NCBI RefSeq assembly: GCF_006345805.1
Contig: NC_042997.1
Location: forward strand, 32,984,001-33,048,000
Length of the DNA stretch: 64,000 nucleotides
Direction: 5' to 3'
Source of the DNA: Octopus sinensis
Lineage: Eukaryota
In this document: piece after piece, positions 7,685 to 56,408 of the stretch
Layout: every line of letters begins with the position of its first letter
Position numbering within the stretch: the first letter of the stretch is position 1
Notes under the pieces: model-generated
What the model saw: the letters and a program-made list of their open reading frames with translations, nothing else
Database searches by the model: none
Told to the model about the DNA's origin: nothing
Program-made: the position numbers and the translations under genes

Positions 7685-8340
7685 TTTCACTGTCAGCAGT
7701 GATTTGCGTTGGACAAAGCATATCTCTAAAATTGTCAAGAAGGCCGAGGGTGTCTTGGCATCACTCAGCAAGACTTTTGTTAGCCACTCTCCAGCCATCT
7801 ATTTAAAACTGTATACAGCTATGGTACGACCACACTTGGAATTCGCATCATCAGTTTGGAACCCCTATCTTGCTCAGAACATTGACCTCCTGGAATCTGT
7901 TCAGAGACGTGCAACCAAACGCATACCCTCCATCAGACACCTACCATATTCTGAGCGACTTGTTTCCCTGGGCATAGATTCACTGAAGCTCCGGCGTCTG
8001 GCGACGGACTTGGTAAACGCCCACAAAGTTGTCAACCACCTCACCAATAACAACACTGAACACCTTTTTGATCTCCATGTGTCTAACACACGTGGACATG
8101 CCTACAAAGTCAGAAAACAACAAAGCTCCCATGACTTTCGGAAACATTTTTTCACACTCAGAGTTGCTGAAGCATGGAATAAACTGCCTGCGTCAGTTGT
8201 TGACTGCCATGACACTGCATCCTTTAAGGCCCTCATGCTTTCCGAAATCCGTCGAAACTACACCTGATTATATATACACTTTCGATGAGTTGTAGTGCAC
8301 CTGAGCACTGTACACAATGTTTATTATTATTATTATTATT
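7685..8340 (+). mobile_element. 5'-truncated CR1-clade LINE (RT C-terminus, short 3' UTR, (ATT)n tail)
   Basis: ORF 7704-8267 has LYTAMVRPHLEFASSVWNPY, LESVQRRATK, LKLRRLATDL, TRGH and FFTLRVAEAWNKLP, which are typical CR1 RT C-terminal motifs. Confidence 0.92.
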
Positions 8341-21939: not shown

Positions 21940-22510
21940 TTCTGTTTCCCTCCCTCACTCAACATATATCTTTCTTTCTTTCTCTCTCTTCTGCTTCCCT
22001 CCCTCACATAACACATTTCTTTCTTTCTTTTTTCTCTATCTTCTGCTTCCCTCCCTCACTCAACACATATCTTTCTTTCTCTCTCTCTGCTGCTTCCCTC
22101 CCTCACTCAACACATATCTTTCTTTCTCTCTCTCTCTCTCTTCTGCTTCCCTCCCTCACATAACACATATCTTTCTTTCTTTCTCTCTCTCCTGCCTCCC
22201 TCCCTCACTCAACACATATCTTTCTTTCTTTCTCTCACTTAACACATATCTTTCTCTCTCTCTCTCTCTTCTGCTTCCCTCCCTCACATAACACATATCT
22301 TTCTTTCTCTCTCTTCTGCTTCCCTCCCTCACTCAACACATATCTTTCTTTCTTTCTCTCTCTTTTGCTTCCTTCCCTCACTTAACACATATCTTTCTTT
22401 CTCTCTCTTCTGCTTCCTTCCCTCACTTAATACATCTTTCTTTCTCTCTCTCTCTCTCCTACTTTCTTCCCTCACTTAACACATACCTTTCTTTTCTCTC
22501 TCTCTCTCTT
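21940..22510. repeat. Polypyrimidine minisatellite, ~12 units of ~45-50 bp (ttctgcttccctccctcactcaacacatatctttctttctctc)
   Basis: Direct inspection. Units vary mainly in (CT)n/(CTTT)n length. Confidence 0.92.
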
Positions 22511-22549
22511 CACATACACAAGCACTTATACACGCATACATATAACTAC

Positions 22550-22784: not shown

Positions 22785-23974
22785 ATGTATCGCTGTGTCG
22801 TCAGTTCTTGTCAAGGCAGGGTTCCTTTGCGGCGATTTTACGGTACAGGTTGCCATCTTCGACCTTCCCTATCGAAACAACCGTCCTCTACTTTTTTAAG
22901 GAATTTACGAAATAATGAACTACTTGGTGTTTGTCCTCAGGAAAATGCTTCTACTGCCAATATGACACTTGCTCGATGTATGTCTGGACATGGACACAAA
23001 ACGGATAAAGAAATCGATGTGCAACAGAAGAGTAGGATGGATGATCTACCTGTACCTCAGGGATCCTGGCAGGAATCATTCCATAACCTTAACCGCTCAA
23101 ACAACATCTTCTTAGCCGTAAGTTCCGCTTTTTTCGTGGTTACAGGGTTTACAATGTACAAGATGAATTGTTTCAAATGGAATTCAGGCCCGGACATTAA
23201 ATCTATTCCAATAAAGCCAGAAGCAATTGGTCTTGGTGCCGGTACTGCAGCCACTGTTGATAGCGCTGAAGCTGTTGTTGAAGAAAGTTCCGTTGGACCA
23301 GATTTGGATGTTGTTCCAGCAGAAGAACCGGTTACACCAACCCCTACTGCTGAAGAACCGGTCGCACCCACCCCTGCTGCAGAAGAACCGGTCGCAGAAG
23401 AATCGGCTGCACCTGCTGCCGAAGAACCAGCTGCACCTACCCCTGTGGCCGAAGAACCGGCTGCACCTACCCCTGTGGCCGAAGAACCGGCTGCACCTAC
23501 CCCTGTGGCCGAAGAACCGGCTGCACCTGCTGCCGAAGAACCAGCTGCACCTGCCCCTGTGGCCGAAGAACCGGCTGCACCTGCCCCTGTTGCCGAAGAA
23601 CCGGCTGCCCCTGCGGCCGAAGAACCGGTTGCACCTGCCCCTGCTGAAGAACCAGCTGCACCACCTCCCCCAGAAGACACACCACCACCACCTCCCCCAG
23701 AAGACACACCACCACCACCTCCCCCAGAAGACACACCACCTCCACCTCCCCCTGAAGAGACACCACCTCCACCTGCAGAAGACACTCCATCATCGCCACC
23801 AACTACAGCTGCCGAGCCAGAAACTCCGAAAGTTGAGGCTACCACCAGAACAGCCGAAAATGTTGCACCCGAATCGAAAGCGACTTCAATCGATTGGTCT
23901 CAAGTGCCCGCTATCCCTGCACACGTCCCTTATTTATTAATTGGGGCTGGTACTGCTTCATTTGCAGCATTTAG
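22785..23974 (+). CDS. AIFM1: AIFM1 exon 1: mitochondrial presequence, COX7B-like TM domain, acidic Pro-rich linker, start of FAD-binding domain
   Basis: Arg-rich acid-poor N-terminus. Ends PAHVPYLLIGAGTASFAAF-AG|GTATGG (phase 2). 1190 nt. Confidence 0.93.
23037..23192 (+). other. Deltameth_res/Prag01-type (COX7B-like) domain within exon 1, aa 85-136, TM ~aa 108-125
   Basis: MDDLPVPQGSWQESFHNLNRSNNIFLAVSSAFFVVTGFTMYKMNCFKWNSGP. The M-x-D-L-P-V-P-x-G-x-W signature, single TM and W-N-x-x-P end are recalled from this family. Confidence 0.8.
23319..23800 (+). repeat. Coding minisatellite: AEEPAAPTPV-type (24-30 nt) repeats, then PEDTPPPPP-type (27 nt) repeats
   Basis: gccgaagaaccggctgcacctacccctgtg and ccagaagacacaccaccaccacctccc arrays, all frame-preserving. 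Confidence 0.95.
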
Positions 23975-26900
23975 GTATGGTTTTGCCTAACTTTGTCTAT
24001 CGATTGTTTTTGGTCTTATATATATATTATATACATAGATTTGAATTCAATTTTCTTCGTAATCTTACTAATACACACATATTTCTTCAGCGTGATAGTC
24101 AATCAAGTATGCTAACACAATTGCGATAATTATATATATATATATATAGACACTAATTTACTATCTCTATCGCTGTTTTGGAACTCTTTACTTTTTATAA
24201 GTTTGACCTATAATCGATAAGGGGTGGGTTAGAATATTGAAATTATTATTGTCAATTGCTAATTTATCGAACATCTACAACATGTGGATTCATGTATTAA
24301 AATTTTAAACGCTAGTTTGACAGTACTGAAAATATTTCTTTGTCCCCTATAAAATCGTTGGGCGGATACTGACTGCTGAATATTATTATATTGATTAACA
24401 AGTCAACCTGGTGTTACTATCCTCACCTGAACTCGTTGCAATGCAAAGAGTAGCATGGAATTGTCGAAGCATTTGCTTGCTGTCACTGCCACTATATTAT
24501 GTATTACTGGTACATGATCTCAAACGAAATCAACTATTACAGCGTATATTAAGTTTATGAAACAGAATCGGTAATAGGAAATGATTTGTCGAATTGATTC
24601 CAACTTACAAGATGCTATATTTTTCTAATTCCATTGAATATCATTTCTTTTTTTTTTTTGTGATATGTTCACATCCCAATGTTGTCGACTTCACCTTTCA
24701 TCTCCCATAAAACTAAGCAGCCAGTCTATTACTGAAGTCGATTAAACCAGCTACCTCCTTAAGAAAAAAAAAAAAAAGCAAGAAATAAAAATAAAAGTCA
24801 CCTTGTGACAAAGCTAGAAATCCTTATTGTTAATATTTTGTTGAAATCTTACAAATTGGGTCCATTTTTTTCTGTAAATGTTTAAAAATCTTTTTGATAA
24901 TTTTGATATTTTAACATATGCACTTTTTGATATCTTTAAAATTTTACATCTGAATACTCTTCAATTACAAAAGAATAAAAAATTAAGAAGAAAATCGTAT
25001 ATTATTTTATCATGATAGAATACATTTGATATGTTATCTATTGTTGCATTGGTCAAATACACTGGCACCAATAGTGCTTGTATGTGGGTGGATGTTACTG
25101 GAATTGTCATATTTGACATTGTCACTATAAAATAATTTAGGAACTTTTATGAACTTATAAACTTCAAAAAATTTTTTGTGAAATAGATTAAGGTATGTGA
25201 CATTGGAATCACAGAAAGAAAAACTGGGAAACATTGTAAGGGAAAAAAAAGCAAAGAACATGAAAATTCTATGTCCAGTTTCTGATCATATGAAAGTGAA
25301 TATTTCTTGACTATTCAATTATTTAATTTAGGGAAAAATGATCAGGTTTTCCACTCATCCTCTTGTTTTTGCATTTTTCCCCCTAATTTTTGTGATTATT
25401 GGGTTTAATTCCCATTCTATTCTAGATTTTGCCACTTTGTAATTAAACGAGGGCACTTAGCTAATAAAGGTCATGAGAGTTGTTCTGTTATAAAATCCTT
25501 TAGAAATTGATACTCACCTAACCTGTAGTATGTCCCATCCTGAATTTTAAAATTTCAGATCAACCAACTGGCTTATGACATTCTCTAGATTTGATTGACT
25601 ACCTCTGTTCCAATCTCTGCACAACTAGAGCTGATCTGGGTAACTCAGTAACATTTAATTCAAAGAGATTTTCTTCTTTAAACTGAACTCGATTTGCTAA
25701 TTACAGCAACCCACTTTTATACGTTTCTATCATTCTAAATATTTGGGTCAGCAGAAGAGGTTTTAATCATATTACTTACATACAAATGAGATAAATTAAA
25801 AGAATAAGTTTGATAGCACAAAAATATTCTCTCCTGAATAAACATTTGTTAAATGTATGTATTTACACTGTTTAATTAGAATTGTGATTAATATCACTTA
25901 AATTTCGCATTAAACCCCTTTATATGTTTAATTCCTGTTAGCATGGTAAGTTAGTGAATTGGGAAAGTATATGTCAGTCATGTCCTGGTTGGCAAAACCT
26001 ATATTTGGTTGGCAATTTATGACAGTTGATAATTCTAATTTACAATGCTTATTCATATTCCAGCAGAAAAAAAATATCTAATATTCACTCCTTGTGCTCC
26101 ATCTTGCATTAACTGTTCAAGTAAATTCAAAATTCCAGTCTTTGAAACATCAGCATAAACAACAATGATAATGTTTGTGCATAGCATTAATTCATTAACT
26201 CCTCAAGGTCAGTCATATGTTTTCAGGAAATTGTTGCAGACAGTGTTTCAAGGCCTGATTTTTTAATCAATATGCCAAACCTATGCAGGCGAGATTGCTA
26301 CATTCAGAAATGCTGATCAAATTACCCAACTCACTAAAATACCTTTGTCCCATAGATTTTGTCAAGCAGCTGATTAGGATTATTACTTAGCCAGAATCAT
26401 CCTTCTGGTGATCATTGCTTTACTGTAGTCACAGGCAACCTGCAATTCACAGAGCTCTCTGATTGGTATACCTAATGAAAAATTACCTTTAATTTTTTTT
26501 TTTTAGTAGTGTGGCCTTGTCCTTTGTGACCTGCTTCTCGAAAATGGATGCCCTTGCCTGCTTAGATGTATATTTTCTCCTGCTGTTTATTCACTGTTGT
26601 CATTTCATCTCTATCTTTTTATAATTGTCAATTATATGAAATATACTATAGCGAAAAAGACAGCTTTTCATTGACATATGCTTTTATTGATTTCAATCAG
26701 TAACCAGACTGGGGCACCACTGTAGTTTCAATGTTTCAGGCATGCTTTTGTTTCTATTCTGTTATTACAGCCATTAACTCATGCTTTGGACACAGTTGTT
26801 AGCCTAAATTGTTTCATTCATACAGACATATGTAATGAGCAACAATAAAAAAGATAATTAAAAAAACCCTTTATATCAAATAACTATAAAATGACAAAAG

Positions 26901-27537
26901 ATATTGTATCATGATAAAGAATAATTGTATTAGGAATCTGAAGCTACCATATGTGTAAATTTAAAAATATTAAAGAAAGTTTTTATTTGTTAATTTACCT
27001 AATTAAATAGGTAGATTTTTAAAGCAAACCTGGAATAACTACCAGCATTATTTATTCTTCAGAATCATCTAAAGCCACTAGTTGCCAAGGGTGATTCTTT
27101 GTTTTGATAACTAAAACTAACAGAATGTTATATAGGGTCAACAATTAATGTAGGTTAGTTCAGTAGGTCATTATTATACTTAAGATTCAACTAGAGCTAC
27201 CTAAGCCAACAATGTTATCAGTTTACTTCCAATGAGGGAGCCTTTATGTAATCACTTTATGTTACTAGAAATAGTGGCTAAATCTCCCTTAAACCATCAC
27301 CTTACCACCTTAATAAATAACACAAAAAGCATTTGCTGTAGTTGTTAGTGTACAAACAGGTAGGAAAGTACCAGGTAATCATCTCATTGAATTTTCTTGG
27401 GATTAAATAACATTAACACCTTTAAAAAAAATGCCTATAAATGCTGGAATTAAAAGGGCATGGATTTGGTACAAATATTTAATTCTTAGTACTACTAAGC
27501 GCAGTTAAAATCTTTAAACAATTTTAAGATAATATAT

Positions 27538-27568
<31 letters not shown>

Positions 27569-27779
27569 ATGTAGACATATTCAAGCAGGCAGGTAATAAT
27601 AAATAGTTTGTAACAAATTTAAACTATGGGGTAAAATATGTGAATGACCTTGAAATTGTGGAAACTTACATCTTTGGAACTACAGGGTTTAAAGTTATAT
27701 TCTAAATGTACAGTATTGTTGAGTTAATGTCTACTGCTACAGCTGTAGACTGACAAATTGTAACAAACCTGTTGTACAC

Positions 27780-28215
27780 ACATCATCATCATCATCTAAC
27801 GTCCGCTTTTCATGCTGGCATGGGTTGGACGGTTCAACTGGGGTCTGGGAAGCCAGGAGGCTGCACCAGGCTCCAGTCTGATCTGGCAGTGTTTCTACAG
27901 CTGGATGCCCTCTCTAACGCCAACCACTCCATGAGTGTAGTGGGTGCTTTTTACATGCCACCGGCACAGGTGCCAGACGAGACTGGCAGACGGCCATGAT
28001 CGGATGGTGCTTTTTACGTGCCACCGGCACGGGGACCAGACGAAGCTGGCAACGGCCACGGTCGGATGGTACTTTTTACGTGCCACCGGCACGGAGGCCA
28101 GTCGGGGAGGCGCTGGCTACGGCCACATTCTGATGGTTCTCTTACGTGCCACCGGCACTGCTATCACAGCTACAAATTCCATTGATGTTGATAGATTACA
28201 ATTTTGATTTTCACT
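27780..28215 (-). mobile_element. RTE LINE 3' UTR fragment with four internal modules (intronic, antisense)
   Basis: Same family as 11806 and 49632. Confidence 0.85.
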
Positions 28216-28219
28216 TGCC

Positions 28220-28253
<34 letters not shown>

Positions 28254-28707
28254 GTGTGTGTATTTGTATTTTCCCTTTGACATTTCTACACTGATTAAAA
28301 GCTGTCACTATACATATAAATGGTGTCATTACGGTCTTCCATAAAAACTTACCCAGCTTTTGAGTCGGATATGTTTCATGTGACCATTGTTGTTGGAAGG
28401 ACTCAGGGAAATAATACCTTGTTACCAGTCAAGGGCTGGTAACAGGAAAAGCATAAAAGCATGCAGCTGCAGAATCTGCCTCAAAGAATTTCCTCAGAAA
28501 AGTGGATGTTAAAGCTATCATGGAGATGATAACCTTCCTACACTGAGAGGTGTATGTGTGTATGTATTTATGTATGTATGTATAGTTATAATAATACATA
28601 AAAATTGAGTATGTTAGTATGCTGTGTCAAAGGAGTTTAATGTTTGGGAAGTCTTATTTTACTGGGGTTTTTACATCTACTTTTTCAAGTTTGTGTCAGT
28701 GGTACAT

Positions 28708-28739
<32 letters not shown>

Positions 28740-29118
28740 TATTTTACTTGTTTCAGTCATTAAAGAGTTTTTTTAGTTGAAAAAATCAACCCCAGGACTT
28801 TTTTTTTTTTAAAGCCTAGTACTTATTCTATCAGCCTCTTTTGCTGAACTGCTAAGTTATGGGGACCTAAACACCAACACTGGTTGTCAAGCAATGATGG
28901 GGTGGAGGGCAGGACAAACACAGACATAAAAACATACATACATACATATATATATTTGATGGGCTTCTTTCAGTTTCCATCTACCAAATCCACTCACAAG
29001 GCATTGGTCAGTCTGAGGCTATAGTAGAAGGTACTTGCCCAAGGTGCTACACAGTGGGACTGAACCTTGAACCATGTGGTTGGTAAGCAAGCTACTTACC
29101 ACACAGCCACTCCTGTGC
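28740..29118 (-). mobile_element. SINE family A, diverged (intronic)
   Basis: Tail and head present. Confidence 0.8.
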
Positions 29119-30805
29119 CTATATATATATATATATATGAAATGGTTTACATTTGTGTTGACACACAAGAACTTCCAGTTGTGGTCTTTCATGATACAAA
29201 CTATTATATTTGTGCCATCAAAAATGATGGAAGTTTTATTAATCTTAGAGAATGCCATATCTATTTAGATGAAATAAAAGAAATTAATCCTTTTCTTACT
29301 TTGTAAAATATCATACTATGTGTATGTGTGTAAGACTAAACTTTAAATTCTTTTATTTTTGAAAGCATCTACTATACTCACATACTGTTTAGAACTAAAG
29401 TGAAAGTAAAATGAACAACTCGTCCTTTGACTGTTCATTTTCAAACTGTCACTGTGTGTCATTTGACATCCTCCTACTTTAATAGTACCCCAGTAGTATG
29501 ATAGCAAACAGTCATAGAAGCTATATGTGGATAGATGACCTGACAAAGAAGTCTCTAAGTGATTACTGGGCTTGCTAGAAATAACAGCCAAATCTTTAAA
29601 TCACATCCTGTTATCTTAAAAAAAAGGAAAGGACATAACAGAAAATGTAGTCCTTGACCTTCAGAACAAGAGGATGATCATAGGTGAACAACCAACCCAT
29701 CATTTGGATATAGGTCTGCAAAATATGGCTGACCTGTACAGATTGTTTAATTTAGCTCTAACTTTGATTCCATATATCTCACAGAAGGAACATTTATAAT
29801 AGTTAGCTCATAGTTTACTGCATGATTAGACTTTAATCAGTCTAGTAATCAGTTAATGTTTTTCACAAATGTCTGTCTTGTTTTTAACTAATTAGTTAGC
29901 AGACAAGTGTATTTACCCAATTTTAGATTGTAGCATTACACTTGATAGGAGATTCTTAAATATTGTTGTTTTTTAAATTATAGCTACCATCACTTACCAT
30001 CCCAAAATATTTAGGGAATGATTTCTCTGTGGTACCATGTTCAATGGATTAGAGCTACGTAATTCTTGCTGGTTATTCACTATAGTTATTAACTATAAGT
30101 TATGCATATTTAATTTTCCTGAGAGAAAAAAAAAGCACAAAAAAAAAAACACCCTTATGTGCAAAAGTCTGACATAATTTAGTGTCTGTTCATCATTAAA
30201 TTTCATATATAGTTGCTGCTCCAGTATGGCCTTGACTGTGAAAACTAAAACAAACTACAGAGCATGGGTTGAGATTAGTCTCATGGGCTTTTACTACCTG
30301 CTGTTTCAACACTCATCCATTCTGCCACAGAGTAGTAGTAGTCTGCAGGATACTGTGGCCAGTCAATTAAATTTCTTAGTAAACAGTGCAAAACAAATAG
30401 CTTTAGCTGTGGTAAGCTTTGACCTTGCTGTTTTGTGCTCAATATTAAGCATAGGTTTGCATCCATTAGCATGTGATCAGTAGAACTGCACTTACCTTAT
30501 TTAAAAGGACTGAAAATTTGAACAAGCTTTCAGATAATGTTTTAATTTTAAAAGCAGTTGAAGTTTGAAATCTTATAGCTGGATATCTGTTAAATTGAGA
30601 TTAATTATTTTAACAAAATAATGTTTGCTGCAAGTGTGGGAACTCAGTACTGAGAGTAGAGTCAAATTTATTGTAAGATTCATGTTGACTGGGACTTTGA
30701 GTTTCATATACATTTATACTTAGATTCTGCCCTTATCAGATCAGTTTAAAATGTCTTTCAATAGGAGTGTGATTAGTCTATTTATGGTCTGTAGAAGTAC
30801 CTTAA

Positions 30806-31251
30806 CCCTTTTGTTACTGTATTCATTTTGAGATGCTCTGTGTTTCTTTCAATAATTTTAAATATAACAAAGAATTTAATAAAATAACATTGTTATCATT
30901 CAGCTAGTATTAGGAACATAAATTGCGACTAAGATTTGGTGGAAGATTTGAATTAAAAACTTATGAAAACAAAACATTTATATTAAAGAACCAGAGCCAG
31001 TTTCAGCCGGGTTGGTAACGAAAGGGTTAACCCTTTCGTTACCAACCCGGCTGAAACCGGCTCTGGCTTTGTAGTACAAATGTCTTGTTTTCATAAGTTT
31101 TGAATTAAAATCTTCCACCAAACCTTGGTCACAAATACTGTTCCTAACACCAGCTTAATGATAACTAAGTTATTTTACTAAATTCTTTGTTACATCTAAA
31201 ATAATTGAAAGAAACACAGAGCATCTCAAAATAAATACAGTAACGAAAGGG
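30806..31251. mobile_element. Two piggyBac-like MITE family 1 copies in inverted orientation sharing a central TTAA
   Basis: TTAA at 30802-05, 31027-30 and 31252-55. Copy 1 is 30806-31026 and copy 2 is 31031-31251 (reverse). Confidence 0.92.
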
Positions 31252-32220
31252 TTAAGTACCTTTTCAATAAATACTTATGAATAATTAAAAAGAAACCTTG
31301 AATGTTTTTTTTCTAGAGCAAAATGACAATTGTGCATACTATTGAACATTAATCTTCCAATATCGAACAATAATCTTCCAAACTGTGTTTTTCCTTTATT
31401 TAATAGTTTTTATAGTATATATATATTTTACTCTGGTTGTCTTTTGATGTTTGGGGTATTTGTATGATTAGGACTGTGGTATAATTCTGAGCTATAATAC
31501 TCTTCTGTGAATTGAAGGCATGGCCTAGATTCACTTGCTTAAAACTCTTTCTCTGAAATCACTTTTGGGAGGAAAGCCTGAATATCACAACTTCTCATTT
31601 TCCTTTCTCTGTGTGTCAAATATCTATGTAATAAATCAGTATTTAATTTTCTTTGTGAAAAGTTTTTAGTTTCTTGGCATGTTCTTTTAACAAAGTTTGA
31701 CTGCAACTAATTAACTGATCACATTTTAAATGGATTTGTTTTGTGTTTTTTTTTTTTTTTAACATTAACATGTGAAAAACTGCTGGTGGTTTTGTGTTTT
31801 TCTTTGTTTATACTGATATATTATTTATAAGTGGATTTTCTGTTAAAATCGATTAGAAAAAGGATGAGTGGAAATATTAATGGGTTTATATCAACAGTGT
31901 TCATTTTGTAATGAATATTGCGAAAAGTTATTTATCTTACGTTTATTATAAACTATTCTTGAGTTTATCTGGAAAAAAATTTTTCCAAATCATTATCTGA
32001 GTTTACTAATCAGGGTAAAAAAAAGAACTCTTGCTTTTTTTACTTATTTAAACAATGTATTATTTTATGATATTGATTATAATTATATTTTAAAATAAAG
32101 AATAAAATGATTTTCTTATTTAAAGATTTAGGTTACAAGTAGAATAATGATGTAAACAATTTAAATTGTTTAAAAATACACCTAAACCTGCCTACATAAT
32201 ATACTCCACTTTAATTGTAG

Positions 32221-33604
32221 GTCAATCAGATCGGCTGATCCTAAGGCTCAGGTGCTTGTTGTTGGAGAGGAGAATTACATTCCTTATATGCGACCTCCCC
32301 TTTCTAAAGAACTCTGGTTCAGTGAGGATAAGTCAGCTGTTAAGAACTTGAAATTCAAGCAGTGGAATGGTAAAGAGAGAAGTATTTTCTTTGAGCCTGA
32401 AGCATTTTATGTAGAGCCCAAGAAATTACCATATCAAGAAAATGGTGGTGTTTCTGTTTTGTCTGGACGAAAAGTGGTGAAGCTTGATGCTAGCAAACGC
32501 CAAGCATATCTTGACAATGGTACTGTAATAAAATATGACAAATGTTTGATAGCTACAGGAGGAAAGCCCAAAAATTTACCAATATTGTCAAAAGCTGGCT
32601 CAGATGTAGCTGAGAAGACCACACTATTTAGAAATATTGATGATTTCCGTAGCTTGGACAAACATCTAGAAGAGGCCAAGTCAGTAGCCATTATTGGTGG
32701 GGGGTTCCTTGGCAGTGAGTTAGCCTGTGCTTTAGGGAAGAAATCTCAGTCACATGACTTGAAAGTCTATCAGCTTTTTCCTGAATCTGGAAACATGGGT
32801 AAAGTTCTTCCTGAATATCTTAGTTTGTGGACAACTTCAATGGTTAAAAGTGAAGGAGTTGATGTTCAACCTGGTGTGAGTGTCCAAACAGCTGTTCTGA
32901 AGGATAATAAAGTGTCTTTAGAATTGAATAATGGCACATCACTTGATGTTGACCATGTTGTTGTTGCTGTTGGTCTTGATCCCAATACTGAATTAGCTAA
33001 AACCTCTGGCCTTGAAGTAGATGATAAATTTGGAGGTTTTCGAGTAAACTCCGAGCTAGAAGCCCGATCTAATGTTTGGGTTGCTGGTGATGCTGCTTGC
33101 TTTTATGATATCAAACTTGGCCGGCGCCGAGTGGAACATCATGATCACGCTGTTGTTAGCGGACGTTTGGCCGGGCAAAATATGGCTGGTGCTGGAAAAG
33201 CTTATTGGCATCAGTCTATGTTCTGGTCAGATCTAGGACCAAATGTGGGTTATGAAGCAATTGGTATTGTAGATTCCAGTTTACCAACAGTTGGAGTTTT
33301 TGCTAAGGCCACTGAAAAAGATACTCCACAGGCTGTTGTAGAAGCCACAGGTGAAGGTCTTCGATCGGAAACTGAAGAGTCTGCTAAACCTTCCATGGTG
33401 CCAGCTGCTCAGCTTGCTACACCTGATGCTGATGAGAATTTTGGTAAAGGTGTAATTTTCTATTTGCGAGACAAAGTAGTGGTTGGAGTTCTTTTGTGGA
33501 ATGTTTTCAATAAGATGCCTATTGCTAGGAAAGTTCTAAAAGATGGAGTAGAAAGTGAAGATTTACACGAAGTAGCAAAATTATTCAACATACATGAGAC
33601 ATAA
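32221..33604 (+). CDS. AIFM1: AIFM1 exon 2: FAD/NADH pyridine-nucleotide oxidoreductase and AIF C-terminal domain
   Basis: [110 protein letters not shown]. Stop TAA at 33602-04. Confidence 0.98.
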
Positions 33605-44923: not shown

Positions 44924-45138
44924 TTGAAGAATTTAAATTCAGGGAAAGTGGAAAACAGCCGGTGCCACACGAAACAGGGGAACTGCATGAGTTTCCACAN
45001 NNNNNNNNNNNNNNNNNNNNNNNNNNNNNNNNNNNNNNNNNNNNNNNNNNNNNNNNNNNNNNNNNNNNNNNNNNNNNNNNNNNNNNNNNNNNNNNNNNNT
45101 GAAAAACTCAAAGGACGTGGGCTAGCATCATCGTGGAA
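44924..45138 (+). CDS. Candidate exon of unidentified gene Y, split by the N gap (EEFKFRESGKQPVPHETGELHEFP-H-EKLKGRGLASSW)
   Basis: Strong acceptor ttgttttttcttcttag. GNN-rich codons. Frame is continuous if the gap has zero length. Weak donor AA|GTAGAT, phase 2. Confidence 0.5.
45000..45099. other. Assembly gap (100 N)
   Basis: Run of 100 n. Confidence 0.99.
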
Positions 45139-55486: not shown

Positions 55487-56408
55487 CAGGGTGGACCAAA
55501 ATGATCTGACACACATTTGGAGGCTTAATAAAAGCACAAAATAAGAAATAATGAAAAGAATAATTTTATTTTCTGTATGTACATATAATGCCATTTTATT
55601 TCATTAAGTTTTAAAAATTAAATCAGCTAAATGCTTCCCATCATTGTCAACACACTTTTGGAGACGGTCATGAAAGTTATCGATAACTCTATGGATCATT
55701 TCTTCTGGAATGATGAAATGTGATTTCTTCTTGTGGGGATTTTTAAAATCAAAAGTATTCAGTCATCGCCCTCGATCTATTGAGGAATTAAAACGTGCAA
55801 TTTGTGTAGAAATAGCAACCATTCCAGAAGAAATGATCCATAGAGTTATTGCAAACTCCACCCATCTAACACCCGTGGACATATTTACAAAGTCAGAAAA
55901 CAGCACAGCTCCCATGACTTCAGGAAACATTTTTTCACGCTGAGAGTTGCTGAAGCATGGAACAAACTGCCGGCATCAGTTGTTAGTTGTCGGAGCACTG
56001 CATCCTTCAAAACTTCCATGATTCCTGAGATTCGCCAACACTACACCTGATTTTCTCCCCTCCATACACACACAAGCATGTATCTGACTCATACATTGTT
56101 CGCTTTCCAGACATTTCTACATTACTGCATGTACTTTATATGCACTTTCTGACAAGTTGTGGTGCACCTGAGCACTGTATACAATAATTTCATTATTATT
56201 ATTATTATTATTATTATAACTTTCATGACCGTCTCCAAAAGTGTGTTGACAATGATGGGAAGCATTTAGCTGATTTAAGTTTTAAAACTTAATGAAATAA
56301 AATGGCATTATAGGTAGATCCAGAAAATAAAATTTTTCTTTTCATTATTTCTTATTTTGTGCTTTTATTAAGCCTCCAAATGTGGTCAGATCACTTTGGT
56401 CCACCCTG
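55487..56408. mobile_element. Tc1/mariner-derived foldback element (226-bp arms) with nested CR1
   Basis: TA TSD at 55485-86 and 56409-10. Ends cagggtggaccaaa / tttggtccaccctg. Core encodes CDFFLWGFLKSKVF...IEELKRAI. Confidence 0.9.
55852..56215 (+). mobile_element. CR1 LINE 3' end inserted in the right arm of the Tc1 element
   Basis: Matches the 7685-8340 family (SNTRGH...FFTLRVAEAWNKLP). (ATT)n tail. Confidence 0.9.

What the first reader, a model, noticed from the sequence alone, without database searches (positions are those of the whole stretch)
23217..23915. Very long acidic, Lys/Arg-free Pro/Ala/Glu tether encoded by an exonic minisatellite
Seen: no K or R between K144 and K349 (204 aa). 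The stretch is built from AEEPAAP(T/A)PV and PEDTPPPPP repeats, with all units multiples of 3 nt. Established: the human AIF TM-to-FAD spacer is only ~40 aa, and cytochrome c is strongly basic and binds acidic patches. Inference: an extended polyproline-II tether could let AIF roam the cristae lumen or concentrate cytochrome c between AIF (an NADH oxidoreductase) and complex IV. It is also a likely length-polymorphic coding VNTR and PEST-like protease target.
Basis: partly seen in the sequence, partly recalled or inferred. Interest (0 to 1): 0.7.

Follow-up and report, generated by a model that had tools for sequence, protein, structure and literature searches.

The report
Long acidic tether in octopus AIF
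The octopus version of the mitochondrial enzyme AIF carries a real, roughly 200-residue acidic, proline-rich, lysine/arginine-free flexible spacer made of short DNA repeats; fishes and crustaceans evolved very similar spacers independently, so it is a recurring but apparently undescribed design, with no evidence yet that it binds cytochrome c.

Summary
The window is Octopus sinensis, and the region is exon 1 of AIF1 (857 aa, 100% identical to the NCBI model). No K or R occurs between K144 and K349. Those 204 aa are 32% P, 24% A and 22% D+E, with net charge -45. They are built from 13 EEP(A/V)AP-type units of 15-30 nt and 5 E(D/E)TPPPP units of 12-27 nt.

The segment joins the inner-membrane helix to the FAD domain, and AlphaFold2 predicts it to be disordered. 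It is not an assembly or splicing artefact:
- O. vulgaris, O. bimaculoides and Sepia transcripts also carry it.
- Unit number differs between species (15, 13 and 9 EEP units).
- The NCBI 'isoforms' X2-X4 are repeat-unit deletions without splice sites.

The feature is not unique to octopus. Teleosts, malacostracan and branchiopod crustaceans and one sea urchin have 130-440-aa linkers of the same make-up at the same position, encoded by different exon structures. Across 191 AIFs, K+R stays near 7 whatever the linker length, while D+E, P and A each rise by about 0.24 per added residue.

My best reading is a slippage-grown, composition-constrained polyanionic spacer that lengthens AIF's reach across the intermembrane space. 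The cytochrome c and PEST ideas remain untested speculation.

The parts
22785..23974 (+). Coding exon 1 of Octopus sinensis AIF1 (residues 1-396 plus two bases of codon 397). It holds the presequence, membrane anchor, whole tether and the start of the FAD domain. The donor is AG|GTATGG.
   Evidence: Joining 22785-23974 to 32221-33603 gives an 857-aa protein 100% identical to XP_029632971.1.
23040..23192 (+). Membrane-anchor region (residues 86-136). The hydrophobic helix lies at about residues 106-125 (23100-23159).
   Evidence: Pfam Deltameth_res PF16020, E = 1.5e-10. Best 17-residue hydropathy window starts at residue 108. AF2 helix 95-126 with pLDDT 81-89.
23217..23828 (+). K/R/H-free acidic tether, residues 145-348 (204 aa, net charge -45).
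   Evidence: AF2 pLDDT 29-40 with no secondary structure over residues 144-365.
23217..23321 (+). Non-repetitive acidic lead-in of the tether (residues 145-179, PEAIGLGAGTAATVDSAEAVVEESSVGPDLDVVPA).
   Evidence: Well conserved in O. bimaculoides (85% aa identity over residues 145-178).
23322..23672 (+). Array of 13 EEP(A/V)AP(T/A)P(V)A-type units (15, 24, 27 or 30 nt).
   Evidence: There are 15 units in O. vulgaris, 9 in O. bimaculoides, and 12, 10 and 9 in O. sinensis models X2-X4.
23673..23789 (+). Array of 5 E(D/E)TPPPP(PP) polyproline units (27, 27, 27, 24 and 12 nt).
   Evidence: The motif DEPPPPPPPEDTP is shared with the Sepia-like AIF.
23790..23933 (+). Non-repetitive C-terminal end of the linker (residues 336-383), holding K349, R355 and K365 and running into the FAD fold.
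   Evidence: Nearly invariant between O. sinensis and O. bimaculoides (98% identity and dN/dS 0.11 over residues 349-396). Human AIF aligns from residue 367.
23934..23957 (+). Start of the FAD-binding Rossmann motif, LLIGAGTA (residues 384-391).
   Evidence: invariant G387, G389, T390.
23975..32220 (+). The only intron in the coding sequence (8246 nt, GT..AG, phase 2, splitting codon R397).
   Evidence: O. bimaculoides has the same two-exon structure, and the same acceptor occurs in a cephalopod-like contig, L008.
32221..33603 (+). Coding exon 2: the rest of the FAD/NADH oxidoreductase and the AIF C-terminal domain (residues 397-857), stop TAA at 33601-33603.
   Evidence: Pfam Pyr_redox_2 (E = 9.6e-46) and AIF_C (E = 7.3e-56). 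E = 4e-217 to human AIF structures.
23057..23845 (-). 262-aa Gly/Ser/Ala-rich antisense ORF, with a 237-aa +2-frame ORF at 23227-23940. Both are stop-free by-products of the repeat, not genes.
   Evidence: Only frame 0 links the conserved anchor to the conserved FAD motif and matches orthologues.

Best explanation
The segment is an intrinsically disordered, polyanionic, polyproline-II-prone spacer. It joins the inner-membrane helix of octopus AIF to its FAD/NADH domain in the intermembrane space.

Shown:
- It is translated as part of AIF.
- It is made of 12-30-nt in-frame units that are near-identical at the DNA level, and their number changes between closely related octopuses. It therefore grows and shrinks by slippage or unequal exchange.
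- Its composition, not its sequence or length, is what is kept. There is essentially no K or R, about a quarter acidic residues and about half Pro plus Ala.
- The same composition recurs in linkers that expanded independently in teleosts and crustaceans.

Inferred:
- Avoiding K/R and keeping a high negative charge keeps the chain expanded and soluble. It would also keep the chain from sticking to anionic cardiolipin-rich membranes and from resembling a positively charged import signal.
- The functional consequence is reach. The rms span between the membrane and the catalytic domain rises from about 4-6 nm (45-aa mammalian linker) to about 9-20 nm, comparable with the ~20 nm intermembrane gap.
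- The AIF dimer, and the CHCHD4/MIA40 import chaperone that it anchors in animals, could then work far from the inner membrane and up to the outer membrane.
- Exact length is probably under weak selection.
For: - Identity and architecture.
- Disorder: AF2 pLDDT 29-40 with no secondary structure over residues 144-365, against 81-89 for the TM helix. On the charge-hydropathy plot, H = 0.437 lies below the boundary of 0.492.
- Repeat anatomy and near-identity at synonymous sites.
- Copy number: 13 EEP units here, 15 in O. vulgaris, 9 in O. bimaculoides, all indels in frame. Models X2-X4 equal X1 minus 30 and/or 93 nt, and no placement gives GT-AG, GC-AG or AT-AC ends.
- Age: the Sepia-like AIF has a 194-aa linker of net charge -32 that shares DEPPPPPPPEDTP and is present in four independent transcriptome contigs.
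- Recurrence: linkers of 130-440 aa, net -24 to -106, in teleosts, Penaeus, Oratosquilla, crabs, Daphnia and Lytechinus. Linkers are 46-87 aa and near neutral in gastropods, chiton, annelid, chelicerates, sharks, lungfish, coelacanth and tetrapods.
- Different exon structures: one exon in Octopus, two large exons in Oratosquilla, five small exons in sea bass.
- Composition law: over 191 sequences the K+R slope is 0.003 per residue (r = 0.08), D+E 0.247 (r = 0.97), P 0.230 and A 0.245. With one sequence per species (n = 52) the K+R slope is 0.010, or 0.002 without two exceptions, and D+E is 0.242.
- About 10% of non-synonymous single-base changes from the octopus linker codons would create K or R (for example GAA to AAA), yet none is present.
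- Reach estimates. The intermembrane gap is ~20 nm (PMC4625866).
- AIF is the inner-membrane anchor that elevates CHCHD4 toward the outer membrane, and yeast Mia40 has its own extended tether (PMC11832770).
- CHCHD4-contact residues Y347, W351, V507, F508, V564 and I610 are identical in octopus, and Y560 is F (alignment).
Against: - No experiment bears on conformation, topology or function in octopus.
- Length is not conserved, and mammals, sharks and gastropods manage with about 45-85 aa, so a long reach is clearly not required for core AIF function.
- In yeast Mia40, part of the corresponding anchor (residues 211-283) is described as functionally irrelevant (PMC4951193).
- Lineus (27 K+R) and Procambarus (17 K+R) have long linkers that do contain basic residues.
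- The bovine AIFM1 dimer is modelled sitting directly on complex IV next to its own TM helix (PMC8488679). A 259-aa tether is not needed for that geometry and might loosen it.
- The regressions include many teleost isoforms and related species, and the first search was biased towards similar low-complexity linkers.
- TM positions come from a simple hydropathy window.
- The polymer dimensions are rough scaling estimates of my own.
Confidence: 0.55

Rival explanations
1. The segment is a nearly neutral by-product. A slippage-prone exonic minisatellite expanded in a region where almost any non-sticky, non-basic filler is tolerated. Its length has no functional consequence, and the composition reflects only what is not harmful.
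For: - Length varies freely between sibling species and perhaps alleles.
- Units are homogenised, which indicates recent turnover.
- dN/dS of the lead-in is about 0.9, and 0.34 over the ambiguously aligned repeats, against 0.11 next to the FAD domain.
- Many animal groups have short linkers.
- Part of the yeast Mia40 anchor is dispensable (PMC4951193).
- TolA domain II tolerates deletions until it becomes too short (PMC12204202).
Against: - The same narrow composition (about 25% D+E, 23% P, 25% A, about 1% K+R) was reached independently at least three times, in genomes of different base composition and with different exon architectures.
- The long state has persisted in both coleoid cephalopod branches sampled (Octopus and Sepia) and in every teleost listed.
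- Pure neutrality would predict decay and loss as often as gain, and some E-to-K changes.
Confidence: 0.3
2. The polyanionic tether binds basic cytochrome c (or other cations or basic intermembrane-space proteins) and concentrates it near AIF and complex IV, much as the acidic hinge subunit of complex III assists cytochrome c docking.
For: - Net charge is -45, with regularly spaced EE/ED pairs.
- The AIFM1 dimer binds monomeric cytochrome c oxidase with the cytochrome c site left accessible, so a ternary complex is possible (PMC8488679).
- There is precedent for an extremely acidic intermembrane-space subunit acting in cytochrome c1-to-c transfer (references to Van Loon 1984 and Kim 1987 listed in PMC9502982).
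Against: - There is no direct evidence.
- The mammalian AIF-COX complex forms without any acidic tether.
- Weak, non-specific electrostatic binding at physiological ionic strength is expected for any polyanion.
- Lineus and Procambarus linkers are much less acidic.
Confidence: 0.08
3. The segment is a PEST-like or protease-accessible module that controls AIF turnover, or the release of soluble AIF from the membrane during cell death.
For: - It meets the PESTfind compositional rules: flanked by K144 and K349, no K/R/H inside, DEPST 70% by mass, score +19.
- It is disordered and therefore accessible.
- From my own knowledge, not checked here: in mammals the release cleavage lies in the corresponding TM-to-FAD interval.
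Against: - Any P/E/T-rich repeat scores high on this formula.
- PEST signals act through cytosolic and nuclear degradation machinery, not in the intermembrane space.
- Proline-rich, K/R-free sequence is a poor substrate for many proteases.
- No cleavage motif is conserved between Octopus, Sepia, fishes and crustaceans.
Confidence: 0.04
4. The segment is an artefact: the repeat is over-expanded by assembly, is not really coding, or is spliced out of the mature mRNA.
For: - Repeats are hard to assemble.
- NCBI lists shorter 'isoforms' of 847, 826 and 816 aa.
Against: - Three independent Octopus genome assemblies carry the array in frame, with 9-15 units.
- Sepia-like transcriptome contigs from four separate sequencing runs encode the linker in one uninterrupted ORF.
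- The frame runs unbroken from the conserved anchor to the conserved FAD motif.
- The shorter models remove only 10 and/or 31 residues and have no splice-site ends.
- There are no N bases in the gene.
Confidence: 0.02

Closest known systems
Human and mouse AIFM1 (for example PDB 4BUR, 1M6I, 8D3J)
   Same: The architecture is the same: presequence, single inner-membrane helix, linker, FAD/NADH oxidoreductase, AIF C-terminal domain. The match to human structures over residues 367-856 has E = 4e-217. The CHCHD4-contact residues are conserved.
   Different: The human linker is about 42 aa (TM 67-85, fold from 128; PMC8488679), contains lysines and is not repetitive. The octopus linker is about 259 aa with a 204-aa K/R-free acidic repeat. 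The octopus gene has 2 coding exons, against 17 in a limpet and about 21 in sea bass.
Long acidic linkers of teleost AIFM1 and crustacean AIF (Platichthys, Salmo, Dicentrarchus; Oratosquilla, Penaeus, Scylla, Daphnia)
   Same: They sit at the same position between TM helix and FAD motif and have the same make-up (about 20-25% D+E, 15-27% P, 12-32% A, K/R-free runs up to 284 aa, net charge to -106). Several contain internal repeats.
   Different: There is no alignable sequence. The genes are built differently: five small exons in sea bass, which fits the many predicted fish isoforms, and two large exons in the mantis shrimp. Related groups in between have short linkers, so the expansions are independent. 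I found no paper describing any of them.
Yeast Mia40 N-terminal membrane tether
   Same: It is an inner-membrane-anchored intermembrane-space protein whose extended N-terminal region lets the catalytic domain reach into the space. In animals AIF takes over the anchoring of CHCHD4/MIA40 (PMC11832770).
   Different: It is an unrelated protein and sequence. Residues 211-283 of the yeast anchor are reported as functionally irrelevant (PMC4951193). Its composition was not examined here.
TonB / TolA domain II proline-rich periplasm-spanning spacers
   Same: A single inner-membrane helix is followed by a Pro-X(1-4)-Pro region expected to form polyproline II, long enough to span the compartment that corresponds to the mitochondrial intermembrane space. 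Sequence and length are poorly conserved, and deletions are tolerated until the spacer is too short (PMC12204202; PMC4625866).
   Different: They are bacterial force transducers with no homology. E. coli TonB has both an acidic and a basic proline-rich segment, whereas the octopus tether is purely acidic. No motor or force transmission is implied for AIF.
Acidic hinge subunit of complex III (yeast Qcr6 / mammalian UQCRH)
   Same: It is an extremely acidic intermembrane-space polypeptide linked to cytochrome c handling (references in PMC9502982).
   Different: It is a separate small subunit with a folded core. It is not a tether, not proline-rich and not related in sequence.

Membership tests
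AIFM1 (apoptosis-inducing factor 1) orthologue | Pyridine nucleotide-disulphide oxidoreductase fold followed by the AIF C-terminal domain | tested here: met
   Pfam Pyr_redox_2 at residues 384-710 (E = 9.6e-46) and AIF_C at 714-838 (E = 7.3e-56), both far above their cut-offs.
AIFM1 (apoptosis-inducing factor 1) orthologue | Close, full-length similarity of the catalytic part to experimentally solved AIF | tested here: met
   E = 4e-217 to human AIF chains over residues 367-856. The next family (rubredoxin and putidaredoxin reductases) scores E = 1e-29.
AIFM1 (apoptosis-inducing factor 1) orthologue | N-terminal presequence and a single hydrophobic anchor helix upstream of the FAD domain | tested here: met
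   The N-terminus is Arg-rich. The hydrophobic window starts at residue 108 (score 2.0). AF2 gives a helix at 95-126 with pLDDT 81-89. Pfam Deltameth_res matches residues 86-136, as in other invertebrate AIFs. Localisation itself was not tested.
AIFM1 (apoptosis-inducing factor 1) orthologue | Residues that dock CHCHD4/MIA40 (human Y347, W351, V507, F508, Y560, V564, I610; PMC11832770) | tested here: met
   Read off the pairwise alignment, where chain index plus 76 gives human numbering. All are identical except Y560 to F. N602, a water-mediated contact, is H in octopus.
Coding minisatellite (VNTR) | Head-to-tail tandem units of about 10-100 bp inside a coding exon, all in frame | tested here: met
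   18 units of 12-30 nt, all multiples of 3.
Coding minisatellite (VNTR) | Unit number varies between related genomes | tested here: met
   13+5 units in O. sinensis, 15+5 in O. vulgaris and 9+3 in O. bimaculoides.
Coding minisatellite (VNTR) | Unit number varies between individuals of one species | tested here: inconclusive
   O. sinensis models X2-X4 lack 30 and/or 93 nt at repeat junctions with no canonical intron ends. This fits shorter alleles in the RNA donors, but equally fits reverse-transcriptase template switching. No population data were available.
PEST sequence | PESTfind rules: at least 12 residues between K/R/H, none inside, with P, D/E and S/T present, and score above +5 | tested here: met
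   My re-implementation of the formula gives DEPST 70.4% by mass, hydrophobicity index 39.3 and score +19.1.
PEST sequence | Confers rapid, regulated proteolysis | not testable with these tools
   This needs half-life or cleavage-site experiments. The intermembrane-space location argues against the classical mechanism.
Polyproline-II membrane-to-domain spacer (TonB-like in function) | Pro-X(1-4)-Pro periodicity over a long stretch next to a single membrane helix | tested here: met
   There are 65 Pro in 204 residues. The units EEPAAPAPVA and EDTPPPPPP place Pro every 1-4 residues. The definition is taken from PMC12204202.
Polyproline-II membrane-to-domain spacer (TonB-like in function) | Extended conformation long enough to span the compartment | not testable with these tools
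   There are only estimates: a PPII contour of 63 nm and an rms span of 8-17 nm for 204 aa, against a ~20 nm gap (PMC4625866). AF2 gives low confidence and no structure.
Cytochrome c-binding acidic protein | Measured association with cytochrome c | not testable with these tools
   Only the charge (-45) is known.

The most novel reading that the evidence does not exclude
The tether may be a convergently evolved, length-tunable polyanionic 'ruler'. Coleoid cephalopods, crustaceans and ray-finned fishes each lengthened the AIF anchor with the same K/R-free Glu/Pro/Ala material. On this reading, doing so lets the NADH-activated AIF-CHCHD4 import platform (or AIF's redox domain, or bound cytochrome c) operate across the full ~20 nm intermembrane space rather than only at the inner-membrane surface. 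Tether length would then be an adaptive variable tied to mitochondrial ultrastructure or physiology.
Probability: 0.15. Interest if true: 0.6.

Novelty: new variant of a known kind. Interest (0 to 1): 0.35.

Why it matters
AIF is a much-studied disease and cell-death protein. Its current mechanistic picture (anchor for the CHCHD4/MIA40 import chaperone, partner of complex IV) was built on mammals, whose linker is short.

Several large animal groups, including the genetically tractable zebrafish lineage, carry a 150-440-residue tether under a strict composition rule: no K/R and about a quarter each of acidic residues, Pro and Ala. Recognising this raises a concrete and testable question. Does the distance between AIF and the inner membrane matter for import, respiratory-complex assembly or AIF release?

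It is also a clean natural example of convergent evolution of a low-complexity region by different genetic routes, an exonic minisatellite in one lineage and multiple small exons in another. For the octopus locus itself the practical messages are modest. The gene model is sound, the NCBI 'isoforms' X2-X4 are probably repeat-length variants or cDNA artefacts rather than splice forms, and the array is a candidate polymorphic marker.

Tried and rejected
- Splicing of the repeat. I enumerated every 30-nt and 93-nt deletion of exon 1 that reproduces models X2 and X3 (18 and 6 placements). None has GT-AG, GC-AG or AT-AC ends, so these are not ordinary introns.
- Other reading frames. The 262-aa antisense ORF and the 237-aa +2-frame ORF are stop-free consequences of the repeat and have no support from homology.
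- Assembly artefact. Rejected on three Octopus assemblies and the Sepia-like transcript contigs.
- Exon 1 in a second cephalopod-like genomic contig (L008). It was not within the 10 kb upstream that could be fetched.
- Gene look-up for Platichthys isoform P0063. It is not on record because only the longest product of a gene is indexed, so I used sea bass P0029 instead. Plain tblastn missed the small fish linker exons, and an exact k-mer walk found them.
- Literature. Searches for an octopus AIF study, for a description of a long or proline-rich AIF linker, and for aifm1 low-complexity regions in teleosts found nothing relevant. PMC13240079 had nothing on Mia40 linkers.
- Rfam. There are no RNA families anywhere in the window.
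- The 1120-aa Holothuria 'AIF' looked like a giant linker, but it is an internally duplicated gene model, so I excluded it.
- Octopus CHCHD4. I did not search for it. A search seeded with the human protein would list only its 120 best hits, which would very probably all be vertebrate.
Full report
**What is in the sequence**

The window is AT-rich (35% G+C), repeat-laden animal DNA. An ATG at 22785 opens a 401-codon frame that ends just past a GT donor. Joining 22785-23974 to 32221-33603 across a GT..AG intron gives an 857-aa protein. It is 100% identical to 'apoptosis-inducing factor 1, mitochondrial isoform X1' of Octopus sinensis, XP_029632971.1.

- Pfam finds Deltameth_res on the anchor (residues 86-136), Pyr_redox_2 (384-710) and AIF_C (714-838).
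- Human AIF structures align from residue 367 to the end with E = 4e-217.

The finding therefore lies in the interval between the inner-membrane helix (about residues 106-125) and the FAD Rossmann motif LLIGAGTA (384-391).

**Checking the observation**

No K, R or H occurs between K144 and K349. The 204 residues are P65 A49 E38 T17 V15 D7 S6 G4 L2 I1, net charge -45.

- In nucleotides the K/R-free run is 23217-23828. The finding's end at 23915 also covers K349, R355 and K365.
- Tandem Repeats Finder and the repeat finder show a 24-30-nt-period array and a 27-nt array.
- Parsed by codon there are 13 EEP(A/V)AP-type units (15-30 nt, 23322-23672) and 5 E(D/E)TPPPP units (23673-23789). All lengths are multiples of three, and adjacent units are identical even at synonymous positions.
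- A K/R-free run this long would have P about 5e-12 for independent residues. That overstates the case, because one K/R-free unit was amplified. The non-repetitive lead-in (residues 145-178) is also K/R-free (P = 0.013).
- The G/S/A-rich antisense ORF and the +2-frame ORF are stop-free shadows of the repeat.

**Is it real and is it expressed?**

- Independent assemblies of O. vulgaris (875 aa) and O. bimaculoides (826 aa) carry the same array in frame.
- A Sepia-like AIF of 797 aa, which clusters with Acanthosepion pharaonis AIFM1, is encoded without interruption in about 3-kb transcript contigs from four separate sequencing runs. It has a 194-aa linker of net charge -32 that shares DEPPPPPPPEDTP with Octopus. 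The tether is thus present in both coleoid branches sampled and is in mature mRNA.
- EEP-unit counts are 13 (O. sinensis), 15 (O. vulgaris) and 9 (O. bimaculoides). Polyproline units number 5, 5 and 3.
- All indels between O. sinensis and O. bimaculoides are in frame.
- NCBI's O. sinensis isoforms X2, X3 and X4 equal X1 minus 30 nt, 93 nt, or both. None of the 18 and 6 possible placements has canonical intron ends. These are repeat-unit deletions: either shorter alleles in the animals that supplied the RNA, or reverse-transcriptase template switching. They are not alternative splicing.

**Disorder**

AlphaFold2, run with a 32-sequence alignment, gives pLDDT 29-40 and no secondary structure for residues 144-365. 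The anchor helix scores 81-89 and most of the catalytic domain scores above 80. The charge-hydropathy position is on the disordered side. With Pro every 1-4 residues and four PPPPPP runs, polyproline-II character is expected but was not measured.

**The wider pattern**

The first homology search was enriched for long AIFs, because the low-complexity part contributed to the score. I repeated it with the tether removed. I then measured the interval between the best hydrophobic window and the FAD motif in every hit.

| Group | Linker length (aa) | Net charge |
|---|---|---|
| Coleoid cephalopods | 194-277 | -30 to -47 |
| Teleosts | about 140-308 | K/R-free runs up to 284 aa |
| Bowfin (intermediate) | 134 | -14 |
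| Malacostracan and branchiopod crustaceans (Oratosquilla 437, Penaeus about 400, crabs, Daphnia) | up to 437 | Oratosquilla -106 |
| Sea urchin Lytechinus | 138 | -25 |
| Gastropods, chiton, annelid, priapulid, horseshoe crab, scorpion, barnacles, other echinoderms, hemichordates, sharks and rays, lungfish, coelacanth, tetrapods | 46-87 | about +6 to -9 |

- Exon structures differ. The whole tether is in exon 1 in Octopus. Oratosquilla uses two large exons. Sea bass uses five small exons, which fits the swarm of predicted fish isoforms.
- The phylogenetic distribution and these architectures indicate at least three independent expansions.
- Over 191 sequences K+R does not rise with linker length (slope 0.003 per residue, r = 0.08, intercept 7). 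D+E, P and A rise by 0.247, 0.230 and 0.245 per residue (r = 0.92-0.97).
- With one sequence per species (n = 52) the picture is the same.
- In the cores of the 21 long linkers K+R is 1.7% (1.0% without Lineus and Procambarus), against 11.9% in the rest of octopus AIF.
- About 10% of non-synonymous single-base changes from the octopus linker codons would create K or R. Their absence across lineages points to purifying selection on composition.
- Lineus and Procambarus are exceptions: their long linkers contain basic residues.

**How it most likely works**

Shown: this is a disordered, acidic, Pro/Ala-rich spacer of AIF. It changes length by unit gain and loss, and its composition is constrained while its sequence and length are not.

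Inferred:
- The polyanionic, proline-stiffened chain stays expanded.
- It does not adhere to anionic membranes and does not resemble a positively charged targeting signal.
- Its effect is to enlarge the volume the catalytic domain can explore.

My scaling estimates give an rms span of 9-20 nm for the 259-residue linker, against 4-6.5 nm for a 45-residue one. The gap between the outer and inner boundary membranes is ~20 nm (PMC4625866).

In animals the NADH-bound AIF dimer is the inner-membrane anchor of the import chaperone CHCHD4/MIA40, and is modelled as elevating it toward the outer membrane. Yeast Mia40 has an extended tether of its own (PMC11832770). The CHCHD4-contact residues of AIF are conserved in octopus. 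A longer tether would let that platform work closer to the outer membrane. This last step is inference.

Against a strict length requirement:
- Many groups have short linkers.
- Part of the yeast Mia40 anchor is described as functionally irrelevant (PMC4951193).
- TolA tolerates deletions until it is too short (PMC12204202).

**Rivals**

- Near-neutral filler is the main alternative. It explains the length turnover but not the repeated convergence on one composition.
There is no evidence for it here, and the mammalian complex needs no acidic tether.
- The PEST reading rests only on a compositional score (+19) that any P/E/T repeat would obtain.
- Artefact and splicing are excluded as above.

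**Comparison and novelty**

The protein is an unambiguous AIFM1 orthologue and is already annotated as such. The tether is a variant feature: the same part as the mammalian 42-residue linker, but six times longer, repetitive and polyanionic. Functionally it resembles periplasm-spanning proline-rich spacers such as TonB domain II, without being related to them. I found no publication that describes the long acidic AIF linkers of cephalopods, fishes or crustaceans, though my literature access is limited to open-access text.

I rate it a new variant of a known kind, of moderate interest. The octopus case alone is an ordinary low-complexity expansion. The cross-phylum composition rule is the more notable result.

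**Caveats**

- The TM helix was located with a simple hydropathy window.
- Alignments inside repeats are ambiguous, so the linker dN/dS (0.34) is rough.
- The sequence sets contain related species and isoforms.
- pLDDT is only a proxy for disorder.
- The dimensions are order-of-magnitude estimates.

Noticed in passing
window 22785-23974, 23975-32220, 32221-33603; loci L001, L006, L007, L008, L009: The octopus AIF coding sequence has only two exons. The limpet Patella has 17, sea bass about 21 and the mantis shrimp at least 11. The single octopus intron (FAAFR|SIRS) is not at the nearest Patella intron position (DPTAK|ILV, 9 codons downstream). This looks like wholesale intron loss or a retrogene-derived copy in cephalopods. 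The same acceptor (TTGTAG|GTCAATCAG) and a single-ORF exon 2 occur in a cephalopod-like contig, L008.
   Followed up: partly
window 23317-23363 and 23414-23511: NCBI 'isoforms' X2-X4 of O. sinensis AIF1 are exact deletions of 30 and/or 93 nt between direct repeats without splice-site ends. They are probably length alleles or cDNA template-switch artefacts that were annotated as splice variants.
   Followed up: yes
window 22000-22511: A TC-rich tandem array (period 47-49 nt, about 5-6 copies, with higher-order 79- and 94-nt periods) lies less than 300 nt upstream of the AIF start codon, in the presumed promoter or 5' UTR region.
   Followed up: no
window 23040-23192 (residues 86-136): The membrane-anchor region matches Pfam 'Deltamethrin resistance' (PF16020, E = 1.5e-10). 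So do most invertebrate AIFs in the hit lists, whereas many vertebrate AIFs carry PF14962 (which I recall as AIF-MLS) instead.
   Followed up: no
protein P0003 (Holothuria leucospilota 'AIF1', 1120 aa): This gene model contains the anchor, linker and first half of the enzyme twice, and also the second half twice. It is an internal duplication or assembly artefact, not a giant linker.
   Followed up: partly
locus L008 (ENA metagenome assembly ERZ21867824, contig of 245 kb): A contig in a metagenome assembly encodes an AIF exon 2 that is 79% identical to octopus, with the cephalopod intron position. Host (cephalopod-like) DNA is therefore present in that metagenome.
   Followed up: no
window 45000-45099: There is a 100-N assembly gap.
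   Followed up: no
window 7704-8267 and about 55844-56047; about 28.9, 35.0, 35.8, 51.5, 56.8 kb; 47.0-49.7 and 57.4-61.9 kb: Transposon debris and simple repeats: a LINE-type reverse-transcriptase tail ORF with a second copy, a dispersed SINE-like element (translating as ...GIGRPGAIAEDTCPRCHAVGLNPEPCGW) in at least five places, and kilobase-scale TA/CA microsatellite tracts. No Rfam family was found anywhere in the window.
   Followed up: no
proteins P0025/P0021/P0023 (Lineus longissimus) and P0105 (Procambarus clarkii): These two long AIF linkers break the K/R-free rule. Lineus has about 45-aa repeats containing lysines (27 K+R, net -8), and Procambarus has 17 K+R.
   Followed up: no
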